This document shows positions 4,510 to 34,986 of a stretch of 35,336 nucleotides of DNA, one piece after another. The notes beneath the pieces are model-generated. The model saw nothing but the letters and a program-made list of their open reading frames with translations. It did not search any database and was not told where the DNA came from. The stretch comes from Intoshia linei. Lineage: Eukaryota > Animalia > Orthonectida. The stretch spans positions 1-35,336 of the forward strand of contig LWCA01000268.1 in the NCBI GenBank assembly GCA_001642005.1, written 5' to 3'. Within the stretch, counting starts at the first letter, position 1; each line of letters begins with the position of its first letter. The position numbers and the translations under genes are program-made.

Positions 4510-4777
4510 GTAATATTATGTTATTTTTTAATAGCATAGTGCTAGTACATTATTATTTTTTAACTGAAAAAATTATCATAATACATAATTGTATTTGACA
4601 TATTGTTAAAATTTTCATTTGATGGAAATGACATGAGTGTTGTCTTTTTACAAAAATATTTGGTATTTTATAATAAAGGGAATAAATATATACTAGTAAT
4701 TTAGAAATGGGTAGTTTAAATTTATATTTTTTGTGATAATTTTCCATGAATAAAATATTTTAGATAAGTCTTCTCTC

Positions 4778-5006
4778 CAGTGGCGAATTTAGGATCTAGA
4801 TCTATTATTAAACTCCGATAAATAATTAATATACATAAATCGTATAAAATGATAACAAGCATAATTCAATTTAAGCAATTTAATTTAATTTAATGTGTCC
4901 CAGAAACTTTTTTTAATTTTACACAATGTTCTACAAATTAAAATATTTTAAGCCACATTTGTCACGCTAGGTGGGCACCCTTTGACCATTCCTAGATCTG
5001 CTACTG
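4778..5006. mobile_element. hAT-type MITE with ~17-bp imperfect TIRs and 8-bp TSD
   Basis: Left end CAGTGGCGAATTTAGGA; right end reverse-complements to CAGTAGCAGATCTAGGA. Flanks cttctctc (4770-4777) and cttctttc (5007-5014) match at 7/8, the TSD length of hAT elements. Confidence 0.8.
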
Positions 5007-5750
5007 CTTCTTTCTAAGAGTTCCGCTCTGACAATTTCAATGTTGTTCTGAAAATGACAATAATAATTTTGATTCTATGCATTTTTAATAAAATTTTTAT
5101 ATAATTTAGGGATTAATGAATTGATGTTTATAATTATCATTTACAGTCAGTATTCTAAATTTTAGGTGTCATTTTAGGTAGTTATTGCAATTTCTCGAGA
5201 ATTCTCGAAAAAAATTAACTCATTCTGTTAATAATACACTTAAAATTTTTAAAAATTGGAAAAAATAAAGTACTTACATATTATTACTGTAACAGTATCA
5301 AAATTGTTAATATTTTTGAAATAATGAAGGATTACAATCTGGTATTAATTGGTTGTTAATCTTAAATGAAACATCTAAAGTAGGAGAAAAATACGATTTA
5401 TTTAACATTTTATATTATTATAACTTACATATATAGGAATAAGTCCAAAATTAAATTATTTTTGAAACTATAAAGATATACATTTAAATATTTTTTATTT
5501 TTAAAACTGGTCCACTCATCAAAATTTGTATATATAAAAATGTTATGTTATGTTAAGAGTAAAAATCTATTAATTAATGTATTTAATTGAAAAGCGATCA
5601 CCTTCCGTCAAAAGAGTCACTTTTGATACATATCACTTTATTTAGAATATTTTATGTTGGCGTGGTTTAATTTCCCACATATACATTCCCATATATTGTA
5701 TTCCCTTAATTTTTATAAAGTTTTTTTTGTATAAAAAAATTAAAATAAGT

Positions 5751-6283
5751 AGTCTAAGTCCTTATTAACGGAATTTTTGTTAACGGAAAAATTTCATATT
5801 AACGGAATCTTTTATTATTTATTTTTTTAACGAATTTGTATGAACCAAAAATTCCGTTAATAAATCGTTCTAGAATCTATTTTTTAGAGAATCATAAATA
5901 TCAACTCATTTTTGTAATAATTAGAAGTCAATTTATTACGTTTTTTATCAAATTTTTAATAGATATTAAATGAGATGGCGTTAATTAGAAATAATTACTA
6001 TCATTGCGAAAATATCATTTTTAACTTTATTTTATATCTGTAAATAATTTAACGTTCATAAAATTTTTCATGGACCCCAAAAAACTAATGTGTACCTGTT
6101 GATAATGTTTTGTGCATATTACTTCGTAATGTATTATTCAAAAACTCATTATAATAAGAAATATGACCATTTAATGGTTTTTATTTAAAAAAATTAAATC
6201 CGTTAACTAGGGTTTTACTATGGGGATAATTACATATTAACGCAATTGAAAATTCTGTAATTCCGTTAATAAAGACTTAGACT
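5751..6283. mobile_element. pogo/Tigger-like MITE with 25-bp TIRs
   Basis: agtctaagtccttattaacggaatt (5751-5775) vs aattccgttaataaagacttagact (6259-6283): 24/25 inverted match. Right end finishes ...ACTG-TA, and there are several internal TTAACGGAA sub-terminal repeats. Confidence 0.8.
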
Positions 6284-7744
6284 GTAATTTTACTTGATGT
6301 TATTATTATATTATACATTATATAATTATGTAAGATGTATAATACATTTTAGGCATTCGAATATACATCAATGAATATAGATATAATTCAATATTTGATT
6401 AAAATTGTTTATGCACGCTATAATTTGGCTTTTTCTCAGCCATGGATTAGATGTAATCAAAAAATAATCATACGTGTACCATTGGACGTTATAAATTATA
6501 TTAAACTAAACGTAATATTTTTATTAATTGCATAAATCACGTGTCGACATCTAGTTGCTCGAATTTTTATTCATTGTACTTACTACAGTGTATGATTTTT
6601 TAAGATTTTTGTTTGTTCTACTTTATTAGTGTTTTCAAACAATGGTAATTGCATTGGTTTGCATAATTTACATAACATTTTTACTTATTATTAATTATTA
6701 ATTTATTTATACATAGTATATTAAAAATACCATATTCGTGTATAATAAAATGTAGCGCTTATCATTGAAAACACTATGTTTATTATTACCCCATTTTACA
6801 ATTATATTACCTTAATGTTAGTTTTTGGTATATTTAATATTAAACAATTAATAATGACAATTGTAAGTTTAAATAATACATACAATGAATTGACTGTTCG
6901 CCAAAATCGAAAATTCAAAATTTGTCCGAATAATAAAACCAAATTTCTATAAACGGTTAATAATTTTAGATTGATCAATAATCATGATCTAAATAAGTGA
7001 TTCTTAATCGATACACCATGAATAGAGTACAGGTGCACCGTAAAGAAATTTGATTATAATTACAATTATTATTATAATAATTGTAACAATGTTTACATTA
7101 AAATATTGTCTCGCCATAAACCAAACGTATATTAATAAAATTTATATTAACTAATTTTTTTTTATAATATGAGTTTTCTTGATACAGTAGACTGAGTAAA
7201 ATATATATTATATACAGTATATAATATAATAATATCGGTAATGTAGAGTATATATATAGATACAGTAGTAAGCTGAGCTAGGTGCTATTTGTACGTACAT
7301 AACATAACAGTTAACCTACAAAATATAATATCAAATAAAACTGAATTTTTATTTTTACTAAATTTTTTAATTATAAAAAAATTCAAAGAATAACCAAATG
7401 GTGATTGGTTATTGACTATCTGATTAATTATTAAAATTAAATTTTAGAACAGTACACCAGTTAGCATTGAAAAGCATTCAATCAAAGAATTAAATGAACT
7501 AATTTCTTTCATCTTAATATATACAAATTTTACGGACCAGAAAACGAGAGAAATTTTAAAAATTTTTAGAGGTGATTGTTGATATTTGTTAATAAATATT
7601 ATAATTTTTACATGGGAATTAATCGTATCATATTTTATGAAACCATGAAACTATATTGAATATTGATAGCGATTAATACATTTAAAGGCAAATTATAGAT
7701 TTTCGACGTGTCGCACATGTTGAGTTGATTTTTTTTATTTCATT

Positions 7745-8972
7745 ATGTCACTCTTTAAAATACAAGGATTTTCTGGAATGAGTCGTTACTCATTGAAAAT
7801 TATTTTGTTGGTGTTTTTGGTTGGTGTTGTAGTTTTGTATACAATGGGGTATTTGAATTATAAAAGAGCTTTGGATAAAATCAGTGCCATTTCAAAACAA
7901 GAAAAAAACGTTGCACGAAATGTAGACATGTTGGATTTGTATAAATTTATAATAACTGTTGCACAAAAAAGTGGTGAAAAGGTTATTGAATCCTTAGAAA
8001 ACCATGATAATGAAAATAGTAAAATGAGTAAATCCAAAACGTTAGAAGGTAAAGATGAATGGATGACTAAAGGTACATTTACTCTTTGTGATTTTATATA
8101 AATGTAGGAGATTTGTATTCTAATGCAGTTATGGTAAATCTTTTCGATCAATATTACCCTGGCTTAAAGGTAGTTTATTTGAAATGTATACATAAATGTG
8201 TAGTATGTGTCAGAAGAAAAAAATACGTACCCGTTAAAGAAAAACAATTTATTCGTACAAAATTGGCTTGGTGGTGATTATGATAGAAGATATGTTAATC
8301 GGTCAGATATTTTGATTTGGCTCGACCCTCTCGATGCAACCCAGGAATATACAGAGAATTTAACAAAATATGTATCGACCATGATTTGCGTAGCTGTAAA
8401 AGGAGTACCATTGATGGGTGTGGTACATTTTCCATTTCAACAAAAGACTTGTATTTACACGTTTATTTATATTAACCTGATTTAGATAGTGCTTACTACA
8501 ACAAATTTGATATTGACGGATATCTTCAAATCCCTCCAATTAAGAAGGACGCATGGGTCCCAAAAAATGTTACAAAAATAATTATATCGCGATCGCATTC
8601 TGGGGAAATGGAAGAAACCTTACTTAGTCTCTTCAATAAAGATAAAATTGAAATTATTAAAGCTGGTGGTGCCGGTAATCATGTAATTTAGACATAAAAA
8701 TGTACATAAACAGGTTACAAAATAATTCAACTGACTGAAAGAAATGCAGATGAATATGTTCACTCCACTAATATTAAAAAATGGGACGTTTGTGGTAATG
8801 GCTATACAATTTATCTATAAAGTACCGTTTAGCTGGAGACGCTATTATGAGAGCTGCAGGGGGTCGTGTACTACAACGAAATGGTAAATTAATCAATTAT
8901 GCCGATGACAACAAACAAATTATTGAAAAAGGACTCAATGCTGCTTTGTATAAAAATTTCATTTTAATATAG
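7745..8972 (+). CDS. IMPAD1: Golgi 3'(2'),5'-bisphosphate nucleotidase / inositol monophosphatase 3 (IMPAD1/BPNT2), 6 exons
   Basis: Exons 7745-8072, 8108-8169, 8204-8450, 8486-8674, 8714-8794, 8833-8972. N-terminal TM anchor, and motifs [50 protein letters not shown] typical of IMPAD1. Confidence 0.93.
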
Positions 8973-8988
8973 TTAAAATTGTATTTCA

Positions 8989-8994
8989 AATAAA
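8989..8994 (+). promoter_or_regulatory. Putative polyadenylation signal AATAAA of IMPAD1
   Basis: AATAAA 16 nt after the IMPAD1 stop and 16 nt before the PDHB ATG; such hexamers are common by chance in AT-rich DNA. Confidence 0.45.
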
Positions 8995-9010
8995 GTTTTA
9001 TTCCAAAATT

Positions 9011-10691
9011 ATGAGACTATCAAAGGTTATTGTTGTGTAAAATATAACCCTTTTAGACTTTAGGAAAGTTAATAAAGAGATCCATTTCATTTCGCCATTC
9101 ACCTACTGCTCCTCAAAGCACAGCTAATGGGATAAATGAAAATTTTCCTACACATGTATCGACCCAAAAACTAAATTTTAAATTATTGTGTGCATTTGAT
9201 TCATAGATCACCGTTCGAGATGCTCTCAACATGGCCATGGATGAAGAGTTAAAACGCGACAAAGATGTCATTTTACTTGGAGAAGAAGTCGCTTTATATG
9301 ACGGCGCTTACAAAGTTTAAATGTGTACACACTATAATTAATTTTACCAGGTTAGTCGAGGGCTACTGAAGAAACACGGAGAAGATCGAGTGATGGATAC
9401 ACCAATTACGGAAGTATTGTAACTAAATTTTGAAAATTAAACTCATTTAGATGGGATTTGCAGGCGTGGCTACAGGACTTGCACTGGTAATAATTAGATT
9501 AAAATTGTACCATGATCGTATTACCTTTAGGGTGGAATGAGACCCATTTGTGAGTTTATGACGTTTAATTTTGCTATGCAGGCTATAGATCAAATTGTGA
9601 ATTCGGCTGGAAAGCTTTATTACATGTCAAATGGCAAAGTAATTCTTGGCATGTTTTTTAAATTTAAACGTACATCACATTAGTTTAATGTGCCAATTGT
9701 TTTTCGAGGCCCGAATGGAATGGCAAGTGGCGTTGCGGCTCAGCATTCACAATGTTACGCTTCTTGGTATTCTCAAATTCCCGGTTTAAAGGTAATATCA
9801 CCATATTCAGCTGAAGATGCTAAAGGACTTTTAAAAACTGCTATTCGCGATAATGACCCGGGTACTTTTAAAAGGTTCATTCTATTGACTATATTTTAGT
9901 CGTATTTCTTGAAAATGAACTTATTTATGGAACATCATTTGAAGTAAACAAAGAGTTTTTTTCACCCGATATGACCATTCCCTTTGGTAAAGCTAAAATA
10001 GAAAAGGAAGGATCTGATGTCAGCCTTGTTTCCCATTCTCGTCCTGTAGAATTTTGTATTGAAGCTGCTCAAATTTTACTTAGCAAAAATATTAAGGCTG
10101 AGGTAATCAACCTTAGGTCTCTTAGACCTCTCGATACAGAAACTATTTTCAAATCTCTTAAAAAAACTAGACGTTTGGTTACCGTTGAAGGAGGTTGGCA
10201 TCATTGCGGAATTGGATCAGAAATTAGTGCCCTAGTTGCAGAAAGTAATTTATTTATTGGCTATTGCCAATTTAAACAAAGTATTAAAGAGATTTTAACC
10301 AGCTTAGAAATTTTTATAACTTGGACATTACTTATTCCAAATTTGTGTCATTTTGTAGATAATTCGATCGATTTTGGTTATTTTATGCCAGGGGTGCACA
10401 ACCTTTCCACCAATTCAGCCGAAAAGCTATTTTACTAATTGATAATACGGACCGTAGTCTACGGCCGCACAAAATTTACTTTGATATTGGGAAAGTATAA
10501 ATCCTTCAAATTTCAAAATGTTTAATTTGATGAAAAATTATATTTTAGGTGAAGCTTTCTTTTACTTAGACGCACCAATAATAAGAATAGCATCAGCCGA
10601 TGTACCTACACCATACGCTATGAATTTAGAAGAAAATTTTGCGCCAACGTCGAAAGATATTGTAGATGCAGTGTTAAAAATTAAAAATTAA
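9011..10691 (+). CDS. PDHB: Pyruvate dehydrogenase E1 component beta subunit, mitochondrial, 9 exons
   Basis: Exons 9011-9025, 9057-9155, 9207-9314, 9351-9413, 9451-9486, 9531-9638, 9684-9861, 9900-10244, 10549-10691. Basic presequence, then [78 protein letters not shown]. Confidence 0.97.
10389..10470 (+). mobile_element. hAT (Charlie-like) MITE end fragment in last PDHB intron
   Basis: CAGGGGTGCACAACCTTT at 10389 resembles the CAGGGGTCGGCAACC terminus at 11691-11705 (reverse strand); no partner TIR seen. Confidence 0.5.
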
Positions 10692-10758: not shown

Positions 10759-13700
10759 TTATGGCGGAGATGTGGATGCATTATTTTCATTTGTAGTTTG
10801 AGTTTCCACGTTTTTTTTAGGTATTCTAAATTATTATAATATCATCAAAATATATGAAACCTCGACTCATCAAATATACTGTTGTATTGTTGCATTTGAA
10901 AAGAAGCTGCATCCATAAGGACGTTGATATCTCTTAATAAATTAATTCGGTTAATCGTAGATTCGCGTAGATCGCCTTCCATTAATTTTAATTCTTTGTC
11001 GGATAGGGCTTGTAAATCAATCGGTGGTTTAGGAAAACCTAAATATTAAATCAATGGAACCAGAATTTAAGGCAGAAATCGGCAACCTTTTGAATCTTGT
11101 GGGTCACTTTTTTTATAACGAAAAATTATACGAATTTCGTTTTTGAAAAATAGACATGCTACATTTCAATTTTAAGCGAAGTGAAACGGTTCTACTGTCT
11201 TTTCTCGATTATAAAAAGTCTTCTTATATTCAAGAGTAAAAGGAAAAATGCATATAATCAAAAACATTCAGACTTTTAAGCAGACCTTGAAAAATATAAA
11301 AAATACACTAAAAGTTTTTTTCTAATTAGTATAAACTTATAAATTAGACATTCTATTGTATAAAGAAAATTATTTTTTAAAAATAAATTGATATGTTGTC
11401 TATTTTTTGTTTAAAGTTCTTTCTTTCGAATATAAGCAGAAACTGTTTATATTCAAATTTTATTTAGTTAAAAATTTCACTAAAAATTTGGATTTCCGGG
11501 GTCTGCTTATAATCGAGAAAAGACAGTAGTATATTCAACTAAATAAAATCCAGGGCGATCTGAAAATTCAGTATTAAGTGATTATAATGAGCCAATAATA
11601 GTATAAAATGTTTAAAACGGTTTAAAAGTTGAAAAATAAATAATGTACATGTTTACTCAAAGGGCCACTAAAATTATTCTGTGGGTCACTGGTTGCCGAC
11701 CCCTGTTTTAAGACAATAAAGTTAATAATAATATTTGGAGTACAATCTATTTCCCATAGCTTCTCAACGTGTAGCCATGGTGAAAATTTGGCCCTTTTAA
11801 AAAAAGTTTGAGAAACCTGTCCTATATAATAAATGCACTGTGTCGATTCAGAAATTGACACATATACTGTCAGAAAAGATATTAATATTAATTAACATTT
11901 TGTTAAATATTGCATTAAAAATTAAAATAAAAACCACTAAAACTAAATATTTTTACAGGGCCAAAATAAGGAAATTTCAATCTAAAAATGAACCATTTGA
12001 TTTGATAAAACAAATTTATCAAAAGTAAAATAAAATTAAATGCAATAAAAATCGTCCTTATTTGTACACATTTTGGCGATCGCTGGTTAAAGAACACTAT
12101 AATCCAGGTATATGCAATTAGTGAACTTTCCGTGTTAAAATTTAAAAAAACTCAATTTATAATAGTTTTTCACTAGTGATATTTTTATAAATGTTTCGTT
12201 TTCAGAAATTTCAGTCCTTCAGGTCAAACACTCAATTTCCCGTTTTTTTGAAAATATTTTTTATATAAAATCATCCGCATATTTAAAAAAATAATGAATT
12301 CTGGGACGCGTTTTAAAATCATTAACATTGTCGTAAATCTCAGCCTGAGAAACCTACATATCCATGGTCAAAACTACAAATTACCCTTTGTTTTAAAAAG
12401 TAAAACTCTTCAAATTTTGTATAAAACAAATTCCGAAAGAGTCTTTAAAATAATAAGCATTATAAAAATGGCAACCTAACAAAAAAATTCTATAAATTTC
12501 GATAAATCCACATCACAATGTAAAAAAAATTACGTATTTTGTGTGTAGTGGTGATGGTGGGACCTCCAGTAAGTTCATTTTGTATGGTAGCGGCTATAAA
12601 ATGGAACATTAAATTAAAATAATGAAGTAGATATATACCCAAGTTTCTTATATCTACACGATTGTTATTTTGGTTTGGAGGGCGTTCTCGGTTCCGTTGA
12701 TTTTCATTTCTAACATTTTGAGCATCTTCTTTTAGTAAATCTAGTCTACATGTTGGACAAATTTGTTGCCTGCGGAACCAAGATCGCAAACACGCTTTAT
12801 GAAACATGTGACCACATGGGAGTTTTTTACAATTATTTTCTAAACTCATTTCTTCCCTGCAAACAACACAACAAGGGTCTCCATTATTCAAGTCTTCTTG
12901 TGTGATATCTTTAAATCTAATAAATGACTATATTAAAAATAATACGATGAAACTCATTCATTCTATATATGGCGCGTCTCGATTTAACAATTGTGACAAA
13001 GGATCTTTTGAATGCCCTGATGGAAGCAAATAGTCTTCTCACCAAAAAGAGAGGGTATGATTTATACACAACAATTGCAAACGAAAAGGAAAGGAAAGTA
13101 ATCATACTCATAAAATCTTAAAATGTAAAATAAAAGTGAAAATTTTAAAATTACTAAAAACAGTTTCAAATATCATCAAGTAGATTGCTTTATTTTCCCA
13201 GTTTACGGGACTAGCTGAATCGATCGTGTGTATACAATACTTTATAAATATATACAACAAGTACATTACAAGTAGTAAATATTCAAAAATAAAAATGATA
13301 TAAATGCCATCGTTTGTGCTTTCAGCGTTAAATAAGCAACTGTATATGATGGATAAATCAATCAACATTAAAAATATAGCAATTACTAAAATACACCATT
13401 AATTATAATCACATTATATCTACAGTCCGCCAATCCTGTACATTTCCGTACATTTTTTGGAAAATGTATTAATTGACAGGGGGGACCAAGGTATGAAAAA
13501 TTTAAATAAAAAATCTACACTATTATGATAATTATATATGTCCAATGGACATTGTCCATACTACTATATAATTATGCCCACCCCAATGTTGGCGAACTAG
13601 AGAGAGTATCTTCCGAAAGTGACTGAATAAAATTTACAAATAGCTCTCAAATGAAATTTTTTAGAAATTGCCATCATTCTTTCCATCTACAACAAAATAT

Positions 13701-22994: not shown

Positions 22995-24732
22995 ATGAAA
23001 CAAATATCTAACATTTGGTTAAATTATGAACGTAAAGGTGATAAAGCAGAGTGTAAGGTTTGCAAGAAAATGATATGTTGCAGTGGATCTTCGACCTCAG
23101 GCCTTCGTAGACATTCACAACGTCACAATATAAAAAGTGATGCAAATATATGTCAACCGAAAAAATAAATGAAACAAACATGTATTAATTCATTTGTAAA
23201 ACAAATTAAAACCAGGGAGGAATTGGTAGCTGAGTTAGTGTGTAAGGATGGATTTTCAATGACGGCAATAACTAAAAGTGAATTTATAAGAGAGGCATTT
23301 AAAAAATTATCCTATGGTTTGCCGAAACAATTTAGTGACATATTACATACGTTAAATATATATTTCAAATCAATAGTATCAATGTTAGGTGAGAAAATGG
23401 AAAAGTCAGTTCAAGATGGTAAACGTTTTAGTATATCCCTTGATGAATGGACTAGTTTTAGGAATTGAAAATACGTTAATGTGCACCTCTATGAAAACAA
23501 CTATAATGTCAAATTAGGTTTAATAAGAGTTCAGGGAAGTTGTCCTGCTGAAAGATTAATTGAACTTTTGATTCAAAAACTATTAAAATATAATTTGAAT
23601 ATTTTAACGGATGTATTATGCGTTTTCACAGATGGTGCCAGTGTATGTTTAAATTTGGAAGAATTTCCGGAATTTTACATCAACAATGTTATAATCATGC
23701 AATACACCTTGCTGTTATATCTGTATTATATTCTAGTGATTCGGAGGATTATGTTTACGTACAATCAGATACTGATTTTAGCTTCGACAGTGACGCAGAT
23801 ATATGTTACAGAACGGGATTATTGCCAATATCAGTTGCATTAAATGGATTTAAATTAAATGAAAAATTTTCCATAAAAAATAATATACTACAAAATTACA
23901 TATCATTGAAAGAAGGCCATGAGTTGAATTTATTGTTGGATACCCTGACGAGATGGAACAGTATTACAACAATGATGGATCGATTCCTGAAAGTATCGAA
24001 TTCAGTAATAACTGCTTTTAAATGATCTAAACTTATTTATTTATGTGGAATAATGGATTTTTAAATGTAGTTATACAAATTTCTAATATTCTAAAACCGG
24101 TTAAGATTGGTATCGAGGCATTGAGTAAGGCCGACATAAACTTATTAAAAGCAGATGCTATCATTCAATTTATTTACAATGAATTAGAAACAATTAATGG
24201 AGATAATTCGATACAATTACAGTTAAAGTTAAAAAGTGAAATAATGAAAAGGAGAAGCAAAGAACTGTTAACTCTTATTAAATTTCTACATGATTGCAAT
24301 TATTTTAGATTGAAAACAACCTGCAATGATCTCCCTATGTGTACAAAAAGTGAAACATTAATATTTTGTAAATCCTTTATAGATAGATTATTTAAAGAAG
24401 ATATCATTTATTCAGATAAAGAGATATGTGATGTAAAAGAAATAGATATATTGGAAAGATCTATTTCTGATAGTATGAAGTCAAATAATATCTTATCAAA
24501 TTCTCACAATTTATATGATGAATTCGATCGATATGAAAGAACTGGAACGCTATTATCAAGATTGTTAAAATTAAAGGAAGCCCTTATGACCGTTCAACAC
24601 AACACTACAACACAAAATGAAAGAAATTTCTCCACTGCTACTAATTTCGTTACAAAACGTAGAACGCGTTTAAATGACGAATCTATCAATATTATGTGTG
24701 TTTTGAAACACTTTTTCAACAGTCTAAAATAA
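22995..24732 (+). pseudogene. Decayed hAT-superfamily transposase (BED finger, DDE, C-terminal dimerisation domain)
   Basis: IWLNY..AECKVC..STSGLRRH..H BED finger, SISLDEWTS, TDGAS, CYNHAIHLAV, TRWNS, NERNFS, TKRRTRLND. Interrupted by stops at 23166, 23466, 24023 and a frameshift near 23645; intronless; TIRs not identified. Confidence 0.9.
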
Positions 24733-26641: not shown

Positions 26642-29600
26642 TTATATGATCAAAACGACGATAGTAGCAATTATAGATATAGCGTATAGCCGTGACATAA
26701 TTGTTAGCGCCGAGCTGATCGAACCAAAGTTGCAACCATCTTCAACGCAACATCTTTCGCAAATCTAATGTAAGTTAAATAATAATAAAAAAAGTAAAAG
26801 TACTGTTTCTCCAGTAGTATTTGATGTTTTACACATCATGTTTTGTGCATCAATAAGACAAGGGTCTTGTTTGCACGTACGATTATAAAAACCGTCTCCG
26901 ATTTCTTCAGTTTTCTTTGTAGAAGTAATCTACATTAAAATAAAAATATGTAATAATCCATTTACCCAGCAACTCCCAGTGACTCCTAAACCTTCACATC
27001 CACCCATGGTAAAATTAGACGCACTAAAGAGATCGGTACAACTTTTTTCATTAGAAGCGCAAAAGAAACATCTTCCTGCAGAACAGATTTCTTTATCTAC
27101 GGACAAATAATTTGAAGCGTCACATTCTTCACAGAAAGCTCTGGGGTCGACACATTTCAAACAGTTTGATTGACAATCTAAATGCACAATATAGGTACAC
27201 AGCTTGATTAAATTACTTATGCAAGCAAGTCGGTCATCTTGAACAATATAGTCATTGTAACAATCTGTACAGTATACAACATTAGCGTACAAAAAGCATT
27301 CTTCGCAATTTGGTATTTTCGTCGAACATTCTAAAAATTGATATAAAAAATAATAAATTAGTAAACTTGTGCAAATTACTGGCGTCACAGTAGTATCTAA
27401 GTAAGATTGATCATCACATTTCAAGCATGTAATAAGATCCAGACATTTTTCACAATTTTCACCACATTCTATAAATATGTTTAATAGCTTTTAATTATTT
27501 TACTTTTGCAAGTCACTGTAGTTTCTTCCCACATAGTTCCATCCATACATTCTGTACAAGATTTTGAGTTTATGCATCTATTGCAATAACCTGGACAACC
27601 TAATTTCTATTAAGTGTGTATTTATATAAATATTACTTGAACACGTTTTGCCTTTGGTATCATAAAAAGTGGCATCTTTGCAAAGAGAACAAGAAACACC
27701 ATCTGAACATTTTAGACAGTTTCCCATACACACTAAAATATAATATTTGATTTATCATTTCATTTATGATTCTTTGTTTAAGTATTATAATAATCCAAAT
27801 TTATTAACAATTATTGTAAATATATTATAATTAGTATTGTGGTAATAAGAAATTCACACGGAAAAATAATGGATATGGAACCGGCAGTACTTTCTGGATT
27901 TAGATTATATTAAATACGTCAATGAATTTAGTATTTAAATTTATTTATTGAAAGCAGATATTGATTATAATGGTTTATTTACAATTTTATTTTTTCTGGA
28001 ATTTAAGCTATTTAAGACAATTTTTACGATTTACTGTTTTGACTTTTTTTAAGAATATACAGTGTGTTTAATAATAATAATATACTCATCCTCTTTAATA
28101 AATTAAACAAATGGGATCACAAAATTGTGTTTAAAATTCTTTAAAAAAATGTTCATTGAACGTCTACACATTTCAAATAAAGAAATATGGGTGAAAATTT
28201 ATATAATTTATTCCTACTGATTTTTTTTCACTGCTACGCAATTTTTCATTCTCATTTTCACAAAAGTAGAAAGTTATTTTAAATTTTAATTTAAAACTAC
28301 AACAACGAAGTACAACAAAGTACAATTTTGTTATTATCATTTTTATATTTATTACAATGATTTGCAATGTTGGTCAAATTCATTTTCAATGTTTTTAAAG
28401 TACTCATTCAGTTAATATTTTGATTGATACAAAATAGATACTTTTTACTTGTCGAAAGCAGATACTGAATATATCATCACATTCAAAAAGACAATACATT
28501 ACGTATTCATAATTTTATTTTTTCTGGAATTTAAGCTATTTATGAAAATTTGTAGAATTGTACTGTTTACTTTGTTTTTAAGATTATACACAAAAATTTA
28601 AACAATAAAAGTAAGGTGGAACAATTCACTTTAAATTAAAAGGTAATGTGATATGACGGGTCCACGTGAAACAAGTTTGGGAATGACTACTTTAAAGGAT
28701 TGATAATAGTAAATAGTAGTATTTTTAAATTAGATGTTCAATGTGAATTTTATATTAGAATAAAAATGTCCCTCGGCAAAGCCAGGTGTTGTTTGTACGT
28801 AGTACAAAACAGTCAACCAGATTATTATAGTATATATATGTATTATACAACAGTTATTAATAAAAATCAATATTTAAACAATAATATATTTATAACATCA
28901 AAAATCATACTTGCACACGATTTAGACACATCGTCAAAATAATAGCTGCTTGTTAAGCAAGTATCACATGTTTCCTTAGCAGAACATTTGTCACAATTTG
29001 CAGGACAGGCTATAGTACATTGTATATATTTAATGATTTTATTTACCGGCACATAGAGTCGTCGTAGAATCAAAATAATATCGATCAATACACTTTGAAC
29101 ACGTCGTGGCAGATGTGCATTCCAAACAATGTAACGAACAAGCTAAAAATGTAAACCACCACAAAAATAATACCTGAACAAGTTCCAGAAATCAAGTAAA
29201 ATGATGAATCGCATAAAGTACACATGGTTGCATCAGAGCAGATTAAGCAATTCAACGGACATACTGAAATAATATAAATTTAATTTTTACATATAATACC
29301 CACGCATAGTTCCAATTTATGATAGTCAATACACGTTTTGCATGAATGTGTAATAGCACCACTATCGGCATCACACGTTGAACAAAATTGAGAAGTTGCT
29401 GAATTGTTAATTAGTAAAATTTTATCTAAAATGAAATAATTTTACCTAAGCATTCATTGGCTGAATTTATACAAAAATTTGCATTACAGGTTAAACATGT
29501 CTTATCATCAGTACAAATTTGACAGTTACTGGAGCAAACTATGTAAATTTATATTATTTTTAAAAAATGATACGGGAGCAAGTAGTTACACCAGCAACAA

Positions 29601-32600
29601 CATTTAGATAATATCCAGGATCACATAATGTACAAGGCGATGCCGTTTCGCAAGTTGCACAGTTGTTTATACAAACTAAACATTATATATAGGATTTAAA
29701 GTTCCATACGTTGACAAATTAAGGCATTTGCGTCCCAATATTTACTACTATAACATGTAGAACACAATGTTCCCGACGAACACGTTTTACAACCGTTTGG
29801 ACAATCTAAAAACTACTGCAAAGTATTAACTAGTATATACCGCTGCATGTAGCCGGAGTTGAAACAAAAAATCTACCATCTCCGCAATCTGAGCAATCTT
29901 TCAAAGAACTACAACTATCACAGTACGCTATACAATCTAAAACTTGATTTTACTGTTAAGAAAATAATACTTTCGCATGCAAAACTAACATCATTGAAGT
30001 ACATTGCAGCTGGACAAATATCGCATGTCGTGGTACTTGAGCATCCTAGACAGGCGGTTGGGCAATCTAATGTTTGTTAAAATGGATCAATAATATTTTA
30101 CCGAGGCAGCCGTCAGAATCTGATTTCCAGAATTTAGCTCTGCTGTTTCCATTTACAAATAATCCGCATCGGTCGCACTCGTCAGAACTAAGGAAAACCA
30201 TAGTGCTATAACATGCTAGGATAGTTGTAAATATATTATAAATTAAATTACTATAACACATGGTGTTCTTAAAGTATCGACTTTCAGCGACAGATGAACA
30301 TGCTTCACATATAGACTTTTCTTTATAATAACAATCTATGCATTAATTAGAATGTGATGCATACCAACATACCAACACAAGCTCCATTGGACCATACTTT
30401 TCCATCTGTACATTGATCGCAAGAAGTAGTACTTGAACAAGATACGCAATTTATTGGACAATCTTAAGATATAAATGTGATATATGCATTAAAAATAATA
30501 TTACCTTTGCACAATGAGGCTTCGAATACTTTACTCACACAATTATTGCATTCTGGAGCTGTAGTGGGTAATCCGGATGAACATGCTTTGCAGCTCCATG
30601 TTGTTGGGTCCCAATAATAGTCCAATTTACATGAAGTACATCCATTTGTACCACATACAAGACAATTTTCCATGCAAGCTGGAAAAAATATATAATTTAA
30701 TAAAATTGAGCGTACTGATGCAAGTTGGAGTGCCATTTGCCCAATACAATGGAGAAGAAGCTGTTGTACAAGCATTGCATCTAGTGCTTGTGTCCATTGG
30801 GTGTTTAGCGCAATCAATTGCTATATAATATAGTAATTTATTTTTAAACAAAATGTAATTACCCACACAGTCATTTCCATCATGTTGAGCGGCCGGACAA
30901 GAAAGGCAGGCGCCACTAACCAAACCAGCCAAAGTTGCACATGACACAACTATATTTAATATTGAAATATAAATATTATGATATTTTACCATCGCATGTG
31001 TTAGTATTCCAAAATCTATTTTTTTTTTTTGCTGCACATCTATCACAATATGCCTGCGCTTCAGCTATATCTGGTGAAGCCGTACAATCCAAATCTAATC
31101 TATGTAAAATGTACCTTTAATTTTTTACCTAGACAGAAACCAGTACCACCACCTGCAGTCCAGGTTGTATCCATACACCCTGTGCACATTTCTTGTGAAG
31201 ACAGAAACGATAAGAATAAATTTTTGGTACAATCATCGCTGGCCATGGCTACAATTAATTAATTTTGGATATGAAGCATTATTACCCACACAATTTGTTC
31301 CATCCCATTTATATTCCATTGTTTGATCACATATCTCTTTTGTATCAGGTATGGTATTCCTTGTGTGTACTTTGATAAAAATAATATTTATTGTCGTATA
31401 TTATTGATGGAACATCCCCAAAAGTGGAACTCAAAATTTAAAGTTAAGTTCAAATAAATTTAATTTAAAAATTAAAATATAAATAAATAATTTATATTAT
31501 GTATCAGCAGAGTAACATCTGGTCAATTTAATAGTGCTGTCGAAAGAATCTATTTGCAGATATATTTTAGAAGATGAATTTATTTTTTACACATGGTTCA
31601 ATTACAATTAAATGATAAGTATCAAACTTATTGTTGTACATAAATATATAAACATAATTGTATATCAATAAATTAAATATTATACTGAACTGAACTGTAA
31701 ATTTTGACTATTTCACTTTTGGGGTGTTCCATCAATGGTATTCTATATTTATTATATAAATGTGTTTTACCAACACAAGTGCTTTGTGCATTAACATACA
31801 TATGATGACATCTTGGACACTCTGCCGCTATAATTGAGTCGCACGTATCAGCTAATATTTTTGTATATTTTAAATTACATATATAATTCAATTACCGGTT
31901 CCGGCATCTGCAATTGCCCAGCATGCATTACATAATTGTTGTGACTAAAACAAGTAATTTGTGAATGATAGTAGTCTGTATAGTAAATGTTCTAAGAACA
32001 TTGTTAATAATGCAATAATTACTATCCTTTACTTATATAAAATTAAATGTCTGAGTGTGTATGTATTACCATATATTTAAAAAATTTAACCAAACCCAAT
32101 TTCTAATACAGTTTTTCGCAGAGAATGTTGATATCTATATTTTATTTCCCGAATTTGAGTTATTCAGAGTCCAAACCGAATTTCCCCTTTTGCCATAAAT
32201 AAATAAAATCAGCCAAAAATTTTAATAAAACTTACATTTTGGGACTCGTTTTAAAATCATTACATTGTCGTAAATTTTCATTAATCAAAAGATAATTTTC
32301 AAGTTCAAAATCCAAATTATCTTTTTTTTCAAATGAAAACACCGCTAAAATTTTAAAAAAAATTGCAAATAGTAAAGTTGTATCCTGTTGACATACACAA
32401 AAATGTAAGAAGTAAGTAAGAATTATAATTTCATTATTATTAAATATAGTAAATACCGCTGTTCCGGTACAATCTGCCAAACCATTACCTTAACATACAT
32501 TTTATTCATGTTTAAATAATGTATTACCATTGCAAGCACCACTATCATACCAATAACCCTCACACGCGTTACACAAATCTACCGTAGACCCGGAAACAAC

Positions 32601-34986
32601 GGTACTGCAGTCTGCAACTAAGTAATATGTTATGTTTTTAAAAATAATAAATTATTTTACCAACGCAAGTACCACTCCAATGTACCCCAAGTCTTCTGCA
32701 TCCATAACAAGCTTCTTGAGTTGTTAGGGCGTCAGTTAGACAGTCGATAACTAATTTAAACAATCAAATCAATCTCAATTCAATTTTCAGATTACCTAGG
32801 CATCCGGTACCAACTACGAATTTTCTGTTGTGACACGCCCCACAAAGTAGAGGAGTAGTTAGACTAGCAAGATTGTTACAATCCACAGCTTTATAAAAAT
32901 TAACTGTTATATAAATTTAGTTTTACTGTCACAAGCGGTCTGCCATGCATGTCCACAATCTGTAGCAAAAGCTGCAGTGTTTATTGCTGTTGCCGTACTA
33001 CAATCGGTAGCTATATTAATAATAAATAATAAATGGATATTGTCAATTTTACTTTCAGTACACGCTCCAAAAATCCAAATTCTATTTTCACATCCATTGC
33101 ATTCAGCTTCAACAATTATTGTACTTGCAACAAGTGAACAACTAGTTGCTATAAGTAGAATATAATATTTTTTAAAGAATTTAATTATTGACAATTACAC
33201 TAAACTAAGATTCTGCCCGGGAAGAATAAAGTACAAGATTTTTATGAAATTTGTAAAATCCCGATAAATTTATTTCCAAAAAAATATTTTATTGAATTGT
33301 TATCCTAACTTATATAATATGCTACTCGATTTTTGTTTGTATGTTATGCTTTAAACAAAAATCGAGTAGTATGTTATGCTTTATAAAAATAACTACCCGT
33401 CTTAGAATTTTTTAAAGACCACATTTCAATTACAGTTTTTTCCGGGACGCATATAAAGATAAATTTCAACCTCCCAATTTCACATCTTACGAGTCAAAAA
33501 CCCCAAATTACCCTTCTTTTTTTAATGAAAACAGTCCTAGAATTTCAAAAATTTACAGGTGGTACAGTTTTATCGTGTTAACACACATAAAAAATTTCAA
33601 TCCGAATAATTGACAACTTCACGGTCAAAAAAACATTTTAGTATTTATGTTTTTTTCGAAATATTTTATTAAAACAAAAAATGTGAAATAATTAACGATC
33701 CGAAAATTGAAAAAAAAAATTATTCTGATAGAGTTTATTCCTATTGATATAAATACAAAATTTCAACCCCAGAAATCTACGCATTCCCGGTGAAAAATAA
33801 TTTTTACTATATTATCAACCAATATTTTTCAAATATTTCGATTAAAATCAAAAATTGAAAATATAAATATTGATGCTACAAATTCAAAAAAAATGTGGAT
33901 TGTACGTCTACCATTTCCAATAAAGATATTATGGGTGAAAATCTATATAATTTATTCCTTCGGAATTTTTTTCATTGCTACGCAATTTTTAAATTTCAAA
34001 TTTTTATTTTCAAAACATTTTTATTAAAACATTCAAATTTAAATAAGAAACTAAACAACGAAACTAAAAAAACTTTTTTAATATCATTTGTATATTACAA
34101 TCCTTTGCAAGAATGGTAAAATTCGACTGAAATGTTTATAAAGTCAAGATTCAGTTAATTATTATTGATACACAATTGGTATTTTTAAGTATTTATTAAA
34201 TTGGTACTGAATATATATCATCACATTGAAAATGACAAAATAGATTTTTATAATTTTATTTTTTTTGGAATTTTATACTATTTATGACAATTTTTAGGAT
34301 TGGACTGTTTTTAAAATTCTTTATACAAATGTTAACAAACAAAAAATTAAGATGGAATAATTCACTTTAAAGTAAAAAGTAATGTAATTTGATGGTTCCA
34401 CCTGAAACAAATTGTGGAACCACTCCTTTAAAGGATTGATAATGGTGAACAGTAGGATTTTTAAGTTAGATTTTGAACATGAATTTATTTTTTTGATATA
34501 ATAAAAATGTGCCCTCGGCTAGGTGGTGTTTGTACGTAGTACATAAAAGTCAAGCTAGTACATTATAATTTTACATTATAATATAAAAAATGTGTTCACA
34601 TGTATTTTTATGATATTAATTAAAATATATTAACCAGTGCAAGCTATCCCGTTTGGCCAATATCCATTACAAGATCCACATTCTGTAGAAGTTGTTGAAG
34701 AGCAACTAACGCCTACGATTAAAATAATAAAATATATGATACGAATCACTTTGACATTTTCCAGTAGCTACAGGATAACCTCTCAAATTATAATTTCCAA
34801 TTCCACCAGCACATCTCTCACATGCTGCATCTGAACTAGTCAGAACCGTATTTGTTACACATTCTATTATAATTTAAACAAAACAAAAATATATTTTACG
34901 GATACAGGCTGAGCTGTAGTAGTATCCATCACATTTTTCACAAAAATTGGCCGATAATAGCAAATTTGCAGCTATTCCCGAACATG
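26642..34986 (-). CDS. Large cysteine-rich (CxxC/furin-like repeat) surface protein with C-terminal Ly6/uPAR-like domain and GPI signal; 5' end outside window; 36 exons, ~1,197 codons visible
   Basis: In-frame exons: 34900-34986, 34750-34863, 34635-34712, 33053-33148, 32927-33010, 32796-32888, 32661-32750, 32528-32617, 32457-32488, 31896-31944, 31771-31851, 31286-31369, 31129-31248, 30990-31094, 30863-30949, 30716-30820, 30505-30678, 30373-30462, 30252-30335, 30102-30215, 29971-30066, 29841-29936, 29710-29805, 29574-29675, 29446-29538, 29300-29398, 29174-29263, 29047-29142, 28911-29009, 27637-27732, 27504-27599, 27367-27468, 27217-27330, 26966-27177, 26804-26929, 26642-26764; all introns GT-AG. 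Ends RCFFC...CERCCVEDGCNFGSISSALTIMSRLYAISIIATIVVLII*. Confidence 0.9.
27850..28820 (+). mobile_element. Non-autonomous Helitron-like insertion, copy 1 (5' boundary approximate)
   Basis: ~28135-28820 is co-linear with ~33878-34558. It has an internal duplication (27950-28050 vs 28454-28570), 3' hairpins cctcggc-aaa-gccagg and tttgtac-gta-gtacaaa, then ...agtcaaCCAG. Confidence 0.6.
31401..31738. mobile_element. MITE with ~35-bp imperfect TIRs in intron of the Cys-rich gene
   Basis: attgatggaacatccccaaaagtg (31403-31426) / cacttttggggtgttccatcaat (31714-31736), extended by tcaaaattta / taaattttga; TA on both outer sides. Confidence 0.8.
33200..34558 (+). mobile_element. Non-autonomous Helitron-like insertion, copy 2 (possibly composite; 5' boundary approximate)
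   Basis: Homologous to copy 1. Ends with hairpin tgtac-gta-gtaca (34531-34543), 11 nt, then CTAG followed by T (34555-34559), the canonical Helitron 3' layout. Confidence 0.6.
33322..33383. repeat. Perfect 17-bp inverted repeat with duplicated loop
   Basis: ctactcgatttttgttt (33322-33338) / aaacaaaaatcgagtag (33353-33369); the loop gtatgttatgcttta recurs at 33369-33383. Confidence 0.85.

What the first reader, a model, noticed from the sequence alone, without database searches (positions are those of the whole stretch)
26642..34986. Giant GPI-anchored CxxC-repeat protein ending in a Ly6/Quiver-type domain: a VSP/i-antigen-like surface coat in an animal genome
Seen: hand-splicing gives ~1,197 uninterrupted codons with ~34 mutually very divergent Cys modules. 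These are followed by a 10-Cys domain starting RCFFC and ending CCVEDGCN, then a small-residue site (FGSISSA) and a hydrophobic tail with no cytoplasmic part. The gene continues 5' out of the window, and the ORF track shows only scraps of it. Known: CxxC...CC-x4-CN plus a GPI signal is the Ly6/uPAR (Quiver/sleepless) signature, normally found in small proteins. Long CxxC arrays are typical of protist surface antigens (Giardia VSP, ciliate immobilisation antigens, Entamoeba Igl) and furin-like repeats. Inference: a long Cys-rich rod mounted on a membrane-proximal three-finger domain is an architecture I do not recognise, and could be a host-facing, variable coat protein of a parasite.
Basis: partly seen in the sequence, partly recalled or inferred. 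Interest (0 to 1): 0.85.

Follow-up and report, generated by a model that had tools for sequence, protein, structure and literature searches.

The report
GPI-anchored cysteine-repeat rod with Ly6-like base
This is a real 36-exon gene of the parasitic worm Intoshia linei for a roughly 1,200-residue rod of disulfide-rich repeats that ends in a Ly6-like domain and a probable lipid anchor; it is one of about ten such genes, a domain combination I found described nowhere, but nothing shows that it is a variable antigen.

Summary
On the minus strand, 34986-26642, 36 exons joined by 35 GT-AG introns translate without a stop into 1,196 residues (176 Cys). This equals GenBank OAF69529.1, "hypothetical protein, partial [Intoshia linei]". 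The 5' end is lost because the window is a whole contig.

The rod has two zones: 4-Cys modules, then 6-Cys furin-like repeats. A family profile hits the mastigoneme protein Mst1 (E 2e-10) and the R-spondin furin repeats (E 6e-5).

The last 120 residues have the CxxC...CC-x4-CN pattern, with 12 Cys rather than 10. A low-confidence model of this part aligns only with three-finger/LU domains (Lypd6b, Z 5.7). However, the Pfam Ly6 models do not match it, although they find ordinary small Ly6 genes in this genome.

The tail looks like a GPI signal, and GPI-pathway genes are present.

Full-length paralogues start with a signal peptide followed by repeats, with no S8 peptidase. About ten paralogues lie on separate contigs, are 28-38% identical and are collinear. 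That pattern does not favour cassette shuffling or rapid antigenic variation.

Only one protein outside Intoshia, of unknown organism, shares the layout. Expression could not be shown.

The scan found this family twice before on other DNA.

The parts
34900..34986 (-). exon 1 of the model (begins in phase 1, so not the true first exon); 4-Cys module
34750..34863 (-). exon 2, 4-Cys module
34635..34712 (-). exon 3, 4-Cys module
33149..34634 (-). long intron (1486 nt) holding a dispersed repeat
33053..33148 (-). exon 4, 4-Cys module
32927..33010 (-). exon 5, 4-Cys module
32796..32888 (-). exon 6, 4-Cys module
32661..32750 (-). exon 7, 4-Cys module
32528..32617 (-). exon 8, 4-Cys module
32457..32488 (-). 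exon 9, first half of a split module (ends in phase 0)
31896..31944 (-). exon 10, second half of the split module
31771..31851 (-). exon 11, 4-Cys module
31286..31369 (-). exon 12, atypical 2-Cys module whose IC-Q...Y-W-G..C pattern is kept in the paralogues
31129..31248 (-). exon 13, 4-Cys module
30990..31094 (-). exon 14, 4-Cys module
30863..30949 (-). exon 15, 4-Cys module
30716..30820 (-). exon 16, 4-Cys module
30505..30678 (-). exon 17, double module (11 Cys); start of the furin-like zone
30373..30462 (-). exon 18, 6-Cys furin-like module
30252..30335 (-). exon 19, Cys module
30102..30215 (-). exon 20, Cys module
29971..30066 (-). exon 21, 6-Cys furin-like module
29841..29936 (-). exon 22, 6-Cys furin-like module
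29710..29805 (-). exon 23, 6-Cys furin-like module
29574..29675 (-). exon 24, 6-Cys furin-like module
29446..29538 (-). exon 25, furin-like module
29300..29398 (-). exon 26, Cys module
29174..29263 (-). exon 27, 6-Cys furin-like module
29047..29142 (-). exon 28, 6-Cys furin-like module
28911..29009 (-). exon 29, 6-Cys furin-like module
27733..28910 (-). long intron (1178 nt) holding dispersed repeats
27637..27732 (-). exon 30, 6-Cys furin-like module
27504..27599 (-). exon 31, 6-Cys furin-like module
27367..27468 (-). exon 32, 6-Cys furin-like module
27217..27330 (-). exon 33, Cys module
26966..27177 (-). exon 34: last furin-like module plus the first third of the Ly6-like domain (from about 27073)
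26804..26929 (-). exon 35: middle of the Ly6-like domain (phase 0 on both sides)
26642..26764 (-). exon 36: end of the Ly6-like domain (CC-x4-CN, ends 26729), GPI-type signal (26728-26645: small residues, spacer, hydrophobic tail), stop TAA 26644-26642
26729..27073 (-). Ly6/uPAR-like (three-finger) domain, 12 Cys, spread over three exons = residues about 1078-1167 of P0017

Best explanation
The locus encodes the C-terminal ~1,200 residues of a secretory-pathway protein of Intoshia linei. By analogy with its full-length paralogues, it starts with a signal peptide. It then forms a long, disulfide-stapled rod: about 16 four-cysteine modules followed by about 18 furin-like six-cysteine repeats. 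It ends in a Ly6/uPAR-like three-finger domain next to the membrane. The C-terminal hydrophobic peptide is most likely cut off at one of the small residues after CN (GSISSA) and replaced by a GPI anchor. The rod would then stand on the outer face of the plasma membrane. It is one of about ten old, collinear paralogues, so I read it as a structural or adhesive part of the animal's surface coat (glycocalyx, microvillar cuticle or ciliated epidermis) and not as a switching antigen. Shown: the gene structure, the open frame, identity to the public protein, the family and its collinearity, the furin-repeat homology, and the presence of GPI-pathway genes. Inferred: the signal peptide for this copy, the three-finger fold, GPI anchoring, surface location and function.
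For: Gene model and open frame. The model is identical to OAF69529.1. Furin-like repeats: a family profile against PDB hits Mst1 8tx1 at E 2.3e-10 and R-spondin-2 Fu1-Fu2 at E 5.7e-5. The AF2 model of P0017 has pLDDT 75-84 in that zone. It aligns with R-spondin Fu1-Fu2 at Z 4.5-5.3, rmsd 2.1-3.0 A. The best relatives outside Intoshia carry Pfam VSP PF03302. Ly6-like end: the CxxC...CC-x4-CN pattern with 12 conserved Cys. Protein-language-model neighbours of residues 1078-1196 are all in the Ly6/uPAR/toxin clan at 0.86-0.89, and the same holds for the end of P0106. hhalign against five ordinary Ly6 genes of the same genome is in register over 75 columns, score 18.9, P 0.007, reached by 1 of 200 column shuffles. 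Model residues 1089-1170 align only with LU or three-finger domains: Lypd6b Z 5.7, rmsd 3.6, 76 aligned; GPIHBP1 4.8; uPAR 4.3; TGF-beta receptor II 4.1-4.3. GPI: the tail has small residues, a spacer and a 13-residue hydrophobic end with nothing after it. The genome holds PIG-M (E 2e-49), GAA1 (E 4e-12) and two collinear weak PIGK-like exons. Signal peptide and no enzyme domain in paralogues. Family of about ten on separate contigs, collinear.
Against: Pfam UPAR_LY6 and QVR models do not match the family's ends, although they find ordinary small Ly6 genes elsewhere in this genome. The isolated Ly6-like end of a paralogue folded poorly (pLDDT 52) and gave no meaningful fold match. The structural Z scores (at most 5.7) lie in the range the tool calls middling. 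Pfam finds no family at all in P0017 itself. No GPI predictor was available, and the tail could be a plain membrane anchor. The 5' end of this copy is missing, so its signal peptide is assumed from paralogues. Expression was not shown. The only hint is that three runs of unknown kind hold 0.38-0.39 of the sampled 31-mers, against 0.41 expected if only exons were present.
Confidence: 0.6

Rival explanations
1. It is a variant surface antigen of the parasite. The roughly ten genes would be expressed one at a time, or their symmetric phase-1 exons would be skipped or exchanged, to change the coat shown to the nemertean host. This would work like Giardia VSPs or ciliate immobilisation antigens.
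For: The animal is a parasite. The protein has CxxC repeats of the VSP type and a GPI-type tail. It belongs to a multigene family. Thirty-two of 35 introns are phase 1, so skipping an exon keeps the frame. A decayed partial duplicate exists on C1426, so duplication still happens.
Against: The family is small and each member lies on its own contig. Members are only 28-38% identical yet collinear over about 1,150 residues. Single modules find their best match at the same position in a paralogue in 12-16 of 32 cases, against about 1 by chance, and odd modules are kept in place. No sign of recent exchange, of many near-identical copies or of silent cassettes was seen. No expression data are available.
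Confidence: 0.08
2. It is a signalling co-receptor or adhesion receptor rather than a passive coat. The furin-like repeats would bind a ligand or a partner ectodomain, as in R-spondins and the ErbB and insulin receptor families. The Ly6-like domain would act sideways on a membrane partner, as Lypd6, Quiver or GPIHBP1 do.
For: The best structural matches are R-spondin Fu1-Fu2, HER2/HER3 cysteine-rich domains and the LU domains of Lypd6b, Lypd6 and GPIHBP1. Fixed module order with module-specific conservation across old paralogues fits specific binding surfaces.
Against: Thirty-odd repeats are far more than known ligand-binding furin-repeat units use. The invariant columns of the family alignment are almost all cysteines, so little beyond the scaffold is conserved. 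No partner is known.
Confidence: 0.2
3. The hydrophobic C-terminus is not a GPI signal. The protein would be held by a C-terminal membrane helix without a cytoplasmic tail, or it would be secreted into the cuticle or matrix.
For: No GPI predictor could be run. AF2 models the tail as a helix. The tails of the paralogues differ in length, and the public model of one (P0022) carries about 10 extra polar residues after the hydrophobic stretch.
Against: The small-residue site, spacer and hydrophobic end with no charged anchor residues after it recur in P0017, P0008 and the unrelated P0106. Ly6 domains are typically GPI-anchored (established knowledge). GPI-pathway genes are present.
Confidence: 0.12
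4. The copy in this window is a dead or dying gene, and the open frame is a remnant.
For: The 5' end is missing. Two modules are atypical. Four introns have been invaded by repeats. A related copy on C1426 is clearly decayed.
Against: There are 1,196 codons without a stop across 36 exons, and all 35 splice sites are canonical. All 12 Cys of the end domain and nearly all module Cys are kept, whereas the decayed copy has lost 7 of 44 aligned Cys and about 720 residues. The atypical modules are also atypical in the paralogues. The missing 5' end is explained by the contig end.
Confidence: 0.04

Closest known systems
Furin-like (FU) cysteine-rich repeats, as in R-spondins and the ErbB and insulin receptor cysteine-rich domains
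   Same: The second half of the rod is built from 6-Cys units of about 32 residues. A family profile hits R-spondin-2 Fu1-Fu2 at E 5.7e-5. The model aligns at Z 4.5-5.3, rmsd 2.1-3.0 A.
   Different: There are about 18 such units in a row plus about 16 four-cysteine modules, against two in R-spondins. There is no thrombospondin, L-domain or kinase part. The protein ends in a Ly6-like domain and a GPI-type tail.
Chlamydomonas mastigoneme protein Mst1 (PDB 8tx1, 8wa2)
   Same: It is the best solved relative of the repeat zone by sequence profile (E 2.3e-10) and by Foldseek (E 1e-4). It is also a very long extracellular rod of cysteine repeats on a ciliated cell.
   Different: Mst1 forms filaments and, as far as I know, is neither GPI-anchored nor ends in a three-finger domain. 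The TM-scores over the whole rods are very low (0.05-0.07), so only the repeat unit is shared.
Giardia VSPs, ciliate immobilisation antigens and the giant VSP-repeat proteins of Tetrahymena
   Same: These have CxxC-rich repeat ectodomains. The nearest relatives outside Intoshia are Tetrahymena malaccensis proteins and metagenome proteins with Pfam PF03302. Ciliate i-antigens are also GPI-anchored (established knowledge).
   Different: There is no transmembrane helix with a CRGKA tail as in Giardia VSPs, and those proteins have no Ly6-like domain. Pfam VSP does not reach threshold on any Intoshia member. The family is small, old and collinear, not a switching repertoire.
GPI-anchored Ly6/uPAR (LU) proteins: Lypd6/Lypd6b, GPIHBP1, uPAR, CD59, Quiver
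   Same: They share the N-terminal CxxC, the C-terminal CC-x4-CN, a GPI-type tail and a predicted three-finger fold (Lypd6b Z 5.7; GPIHBP1 4.8; uPAR 4.3). The genome also has ordinary small Ly6/QVR genes.
   Different: Known LU proteins are small or consist of LU domains only, apart from a short acidic stretch in GPIHBP1. Here the LU-like domain is the base of a rod of about 1,100 residues. It has 12 Cys. The Pfam LU models do not match it.
Proprotein convertases PC5/6 and PACE4 (S8 peptidase, P domain and a cysteine-rich furin-repeat tail)
   Same: They carry a long run of furin-like repeats at the C-terminal side.
   Different: Full-length paralogues start with a signal peptide followed at once by repeats, and no Peptidase_S8 or P domain is found. 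The end is Ly6-like plus a GPI signal, not a transmembrane or amphipathic tail.

Membership tests
Ly6/uPAR (LU) three-finger domain superfamily | N-terminal C-x2-C and C-terminal CC-x4-CN motifs within 70-100 residues | tested here: met
   The domain runs from RCFFC to CCVEDGCN in about 90 residues. The motifs are kept in P0008, P0022, P0044 and P0106.
Ly6/uPAR (LU) three-finger domain superfamily | 8-10 cysteines forming the 4-5 canonical disulfides | tested here: inconclusive
   There are 12 conserved cysteines. The spacing of the first three equals C-x2-C-x6-C. Disulfide pairing cannot be read from a model with pLDDT about 50-60.
Ly6/uPAR (LU) three-finger domain superfamily | Match to a curated family model (Pfam PF00021, PF16975, PF17064) | tested here: not met
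   hmmscan finds no family in P0017, P0008, P0022, the exons or P0106's end. Genome-wide searches with PF00021 and PF17064 hit six other loci but none of this family.
Ly6/uPAR (LU) three-finger domain superfamily | Remote sequence similarity to bona fide LU domains | tested here: inconclusive
   hhalign against five ordinary Intoshia Ly6 genes gives score 18.9, P 0.007 and 75 columns in register; 1 of 200 shuffles reaches it. Language-model neighbours are all in the LU/toxin clan but score under 0.9.
Ly6/uPAR (LU) three-finger domain superfamily | Three-finger beta fold | tested here: inconclusive
   Residues 1089-1170 of the whole-protein model align only with LU or three-finger domains: Lypd6b Z 5.7, rmsd 3.6, 76 aligned; GPIHBP1, uPAR, TGF-beta receptor II, cobra toxin. 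However, pLDDT there is 47-64, and the isolated paralogue domain gave nothing.
GPI-anchored proteins | C-terminal signal: small omega-site residues, short spacer, hydrophobic end, no cytoplasmic part | tested here: met
   GSISSA, then an 8-residue spacer, then a 13-residue hydrophobic end up to the stop. This was judged by rule of thumb, as no predictor was available.
GPI-anchored proteins | Host has the GPI synthesis and transamidase machinery | tested here: met
   PIG-M E 2.3e-49; GAA1 two exons at E about 4e-12, both over the cut-off; PIGK-like two collinear weak exons of 21.2 and 17.6 bits.
GPI-anchored proteins | Lipid attachment shown (PI-PLC release, mass spectrometry) | not testable with these tools
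   Needs a bench experiment.
Furin-like / VSP-type cysteine repeats | Repeats of about 30-50 residues with paired CxxC motifs | tested here: met
   69 CxxC motifs, and a 6-Cys unit of about 32 residues in exons 17-34.
Furin-like / VSP-type cysteine repeats | Significant match to a family model or to solved FU repeats | tested here: met
   The family profile hits Mst1 at E 2.3e-10 and R-spondin-2 at E 5.7e-5. Pfam VSP itself is below threshold or absent on the Intoshia proteins, but is strong on their nearest relatives (P0009, E 8e-53).
Giardia VSP family proper | Single transmembrane helix followed by the conserved CRGKA cytoplasmic tail | tested here: not met
   The protein ends in a hydrophobic stretch with no residues after it.
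PC5/6-type proprotein convertases | N-terminal Peptidase_S8 and P domain | tested here: not met
   Absent from all full-length paralogues, which start with a signal peptide and repeats. It cannot be tested for this copy because its 5' end is off the contig.

The most novel reading that the evidence does not exclude
An animal, the orthonectid Intoshia linei, has independently built a protist-style surface coat. This would be a family of GPI-anchored CxxC-repeat rods standing on a Ly6-type base. They would cover its cilia or the host-facing plasmodium membrane, and would be expressed by stage or one at a time, as ciliate immobilisation antigens and Giardia VSPs are.
Probability: 0.12. Interest if true: 0.8.

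Novelty: new variant of a known kind. Interest (0 to 1): 0.5.

Why it matters
Orthonectids are among the most reduced animals, with a genome of about 42 Mb in this assembly. How their plasmodium lives inside host tissue is not understood. A gene family that spends about ten loci of more than 1,000 codons each on probable surface rods stands out as a candidate for the parasite's outer face. The family also joins two well-known extracellular building blocks, furin-like repeats and a Ly6/three-finger domain with a GPI anchor, in a way I could not find in Pfam, the PDB or the searchable literature. If the proteins are on the surface, they are natural markers and antigens for following the life cycle. 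They would also be a case of convergence with protist coats. If they are ordinary cuticle or glycocalyx parts, the finding is a useful annotation of nine 'hypothetical proteins' and little more.

Tried and rejected

A metagenome scan with P0106 found nothing, and a search restricted to its Ly6-like end found only itself.

3. Pfam on single exons and on the long ORFs of the intron-poor paralogue gave nothing useful. phmmer of those ORFs against PDB gave only a BCMA TNFR repeat at E 0.04. phmmer of the paralogue's Ly6-like end gave nothing. A word-index search with that end also gave nothing.

4. The AF2 model of the isolated Ly6-like end of the paralogue reached only pLDDT 52. Foldseek on it found nothing. 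The wide VIA search on it was dominated by the helical tail. I take no evidence from these.

5. hhalign of the 4-Cys modules against the 6-Cys modules aligned the shared CxxC-aromatic half, but the score was not significant (9.5 against 7.4 +/- 1.5 for shuffles). The fold of the first rod zone therefore stays unclassified.

6. A search for the lost 5' end using the N-terminus of the paralogue found no candidate contig.

7. S8 peptidase or PC5/6 orthology is rejected (see the membership test). Contamination by a ciliate is rejected too. The gene has short introns (31-47 nt) with the same splice signals as the paralogues on other contigs, and it shares its contig with PDHB-like, inositol monophosphatase-like and RING-H2 genes.

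8. My own joined splice model was never sent to a search tool. It was built only inside local scripts, to check the frame and its identity to the public protein P0017. All database, fold and atlas queries used P0017 or DNA references.

Full report
WHAT IS THERE. The window is AT-rich (23-36% GC). It is the whole contig C1651 of a 41.6-Mb assembly. The proteins it encodes are deposited as Intoshia linei, an orthonectid parasite.

On the minus strand between 34986 and 26642, every Cys-rich open stretch is flanked by AG and GT in a consistent phase. Joining them gives 36 exons and 35 introns. All introns are GT-AG. Thirty-one are 31-47 nt (median 37), and four are long (401, 512, 1178 and 1486 nt). 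Thirty-two are phase 1 and three are phase 0. The joined frame has 1,196 codons and then TAA, with no internal stop, and holds 176 cysteines.

My first model had 34 exons. Comparison with the public protein showed a split module (exons 32488-32457 and 31944-31896) and a longer exon 12. The corrected model is identical to P0017 = OAF69529.1, 'hypothetical protein A3Q56_02727, partial'.

The 350 nt between exon 1 and the contig end hold no exon, and exon 1 starts in phase 1. The 5' end is therefore missing from the assembly.

The four long introns are long because they hold dispersed repeats, which recur in the window and in most other loci I fetched.

ANATOMY.
- Exons 1-16 carry modules of about 30 residues with four cysteines (C, a 12-14 residue stretch, CxxC, an aromatic residue, C).
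- Exons 17-34 carry six-cysteine units of about 32 residues (C-x2-4-C-x2-C-x5-C-x2-C ... C).
- One module sits in each exon, apart from one double exon and one split module.
- The last part of exon 34 plus exons 35 and 36 encode about 90 residues that run from RCFFC to CCVEDGCN with 12 cysteines. Then come FGSISSA, an 8-residue spacer and a 13-residue hydrophobic end that runs into the stop.

THE FAMILY. Exon 34 as a query finds ten further loci in the genome, each on another contig. An HMMER search of 1.84 billion representatives with a paralogue's C-terminal ORF brought back the deposited proteins. Nine Intoshia entries belong to the family: OAF69529, 69404, 67373, 68963, 67579, 70218, 67584, 71400 and 71115.

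They align with the window protein over about 950-1,200 residues at 27-38% identity in a single collinear stretch. In the multiple alignment, nearly all invariant columns are cysteines. Single modules of P0017 find their best local match at the same position of a paralogue in 12-16 of 32 cases, where chance gives about one. The odd 2-Cys module of exon 12 is odd in the paralogues too.

The member on C1055 is intron-poor, with an 834-codon ORF and a 581-codon ORF. The first starts with ATG and a hydrophobic signal-like peptide followed at once by repeats; the second ends in the same Ly6-like domain and tail. P0024 and P0106 also begin with signal-like peptides.

No member has any Pfam domain other than sub-threshold VSP, and none has an S8 peptidase.

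A copy on C1426 is the closest relative of the window gene (59% identity in exon 34). It lacks the equivalent of residues 184-907 and has lost 7 of 44 aligned cysteines, so it is a decayed partial duplicate.

WHAT THE ROD IS. Pfam finds nothing in P0017 itself. A profile of the family hits the Chlamydomonas mastigoneme protein Mst1 at E 2.3e-10 and the furin-like repeats of R-spondin-2 at E 5.7e-5.

AlphaFold2 on P0017 with the ten-sequence family alignment gives mean pLDDT 63, with 75-84 across most of the six-cysteine zone. Foldseek ranks Mst1 and R-spondin Fu1-Fu2 first. VIA-align puts R-spondin Fu1-Fu2 on residues 652-973 at Z 4.5-5.3 and rmsd 2.1-3.0 A, and HER2/HER3 cysteine-rich domains on residues 501-554.

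The nearest proteins outside Intoshia are giant repeat proteins of Tetrahymena malaccensis and unnamed metagenome proteins. The best of them (P0009) and most hits carry Pfam VSP. The second rod zone is therefore a run of furin-like/VSP-type repeats.

The four-cysteine zone is modelled as a short helix plus hairpin per module at pLDDT 30-67. I could not tie it significantly to the six-cysteine unit, and I leave it unclassified.

IS THE END A Ly6 DOMAIN?
For:
- The motif pair C-x2-C and CC-x4-CN is present, the first three cysteines are spaced C-x2-C-x6-C, and all 12 cysteines are conserved across the family and in P0106.
- Language-model neighbours of residues 1078-1196 are all clusters of the Ly6/uPAR/toxin clan (UPAR_LY6, QVR, Toxin_TOLIP, DUF753, Activin_recp) at 0.86-0.89. 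The end of P0106, which aligns with that of P0017 only weakly (E 8e-6), gives the same result.
- hhalign of the family's ends against five ordinary Ly6/QVR genes of the same genome aligns 75 columns in register, from the CxxC to the CN. The score is 18.9 and P is 0.007. Column shuffles average 9.2 +/- 1.8, and one of 200 reaches the observed score.
- In the whole-protein model, residues 1089-1170 align with the LU domain of Lypd6b (Z 5.7, rmsd 3.6 A, 76 of 96 residues), GPIHBP1 (4.8), Lypd6 (4.4), uPAR domain 1 (4.3), TGF-beta receptor II (4.1-4.3), activin-type receptors and a cobra long neurotoxin. With one exception at rank 49 (a papain-like protease, Z 2.9), the listed matches to that part are three-finger proteins.

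Against:
- Pfam's UPAR_LY6 and QVR models find six ordinary Ly6 loci in this genome but none of the family's ends. hmmscan is blank on the proteins.
- The model is of low confidence there (pLDDT 47-64), and the Z scores are in the range the tool calls middling.
- The isolated domain of the paralogue folded badly and matched nothing meaningful.

I rate a three-finger/LU fold at about 0.75, as a divergent lineage-specific subfamily.

GPI. The tail fits the usual rule: small residues at and after the cleavage site, a spacer, and a hydrophobic end with nothing after it. The genome has PIG-M (E 2e-49), GAA1 (two exons at about E 4e-12) and two collinear PIGK-like exon matches. No predictor or experiment was available.

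HOW IT PROBABLY WORKS. Inferred from the paralogues: a signal peptide takes the protein into the ER, where about 88 disulfides could form if all 176 cysteines pair. Inferred from the tail: the transamidase swaps the C-terminal peptide for a GPI anchor. The mature protein would be a stiff rod of more than 30 modules standing on a three-finger base on the outer leaflet.

There are only four N-glycosylation sequons, but Ser plus Thr make up 21% of residues. The best-matching solved rod is a hair on cilia (Mst1), and orthonectid adults are ciliated with a microvillar cuticle (PMC6543705). A role in the surface coat is therefore my leading reading. A binding or co-receptor role is the main rival.

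THE VARIABLE-COAT IDEA. The symmetric phase-1 exons would allow in-frame skipping. But this exon design is common in modular extracellular genes of animals (established knowledge), and the data point the other way. The family is small, dispersed, old and collinear, its modules keep a positional identity, and I saw no sets of near-identical copies. I give antigenic variation about 0.08.

OUTSIDE INTOSHIA. Among the 150 best of 1,048 hits, only one non-Intoshia protein reaches into the Ly6-like region. This is P0106: 406 residues, with a signal peptide, about eight VSP-type repeats (PF03302, E 9e-12), a 12-Cys Ly6-like end and a GPI-type tail. It comes from Logan and JGI assemblies of unknown organism. 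So a short form of the layout exists elsewhere, but I could not trace it.

The searchable literature has nothing on these accessions or on a furin-repeat plus LU architecture.

EXPRESSION. Three runs of one 2024 study, of unknown kind, hold 0.38-0.39 of the sampled 31-mers of 26642-31336. Words lying wholly in exons make up 0.41 of that stretch. That fits cDNA-derived contigs of the spliced mRNA, but it is only a hint.

EARLIER NOTES OF THE SCAN. My results agree with the two follow-ups on family size, fixed order, Ly6-like end and GPI signal. I reached these from my own searches.

VERDICT. It is a new arrangement of known modules in an unstudied family, already deposited as hypothetical proteins. 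The antigen reading is unsupported and the function is open.

Noticed in passing
G000:C1426:34760-38233 (+), seen in L015/L016: A truncated, decayed duplicate of the window gene. It matches P0017 residues 80-183 and 908-1195 only, at 40-56% identity. Seven of 44 aligned cysteines are replaced and about 720 residues are missing.
   Followed up: partly
window 33149-34634, 27733-28910, 31945-32456, 31370-31770: The four long introns hold dispersed repeats. For example, 33887-34553 matches 28143-28816 at 75% over 699 nt. The same repeats recur at 70-88% identity in most other loci fetched from this genome, including beside other family members. They are probably non-autonomous transposons.
   Followed up: partly
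L014 (G000:C1055:4000-13999), ORFs 7245-9749(-) and 4202-5947(-): One paralogue (OAF69404.1) has lost almost all module-boundary introns: two ORFs of 834 and 581 codons, against 36 exons here. This suggests recombination with a cDNA, or wholesale intron loss.
   Followed up: partly
P0106 (406 aa; Logan and JGI assemblies): A short protein from an unknown organism with less AT-biased composition has the same layout: signal peptide, about eight VSP-type repeats, a 12-Cys Ly6-like end and a GPI-type tail. Its source could not be traced.
   Followed up: partly
G000: C1237:37560-37826(-), C2487:7075-7425(+), C1599:26263-26388(-), C1852:16608-16964(-), C245:8379-8498(+), C2823:16013-16123(-): Ordinary small Ly6/Quiver-type genes with their own GPI-type tails exist in this very reduced genome. 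Where these genes are split (four of the six), the break falls shortly after the cysteine that precedes the second finger, close to the intron position in the family's Ly6-like end.
   Followed up: partly
window 8207-8485(+), 9971-10438(+), 12490-12891(-): The neighbouring genes are ordinary animal housekeeping genes: inositol monophosphatase family, the transketolase C-terminal domain of a PDHB-like gene, and a RING-H2 finger protein.
   Followed up: partly
window 23169-24732(+): A run of ORFs of 99-229 codons has no Pfam match. By eye the tail looks like a hAT-type transposase dimerisation region. This is unverified.
   Followed up: no
window 30716-34986 (exons 1-16): The four-cysteine modules of the first rod zone are modelled as a short helix plus hairpin. 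I could not assign them to any known repeat family, and no separate fold search was possible.
   Followed up: partly
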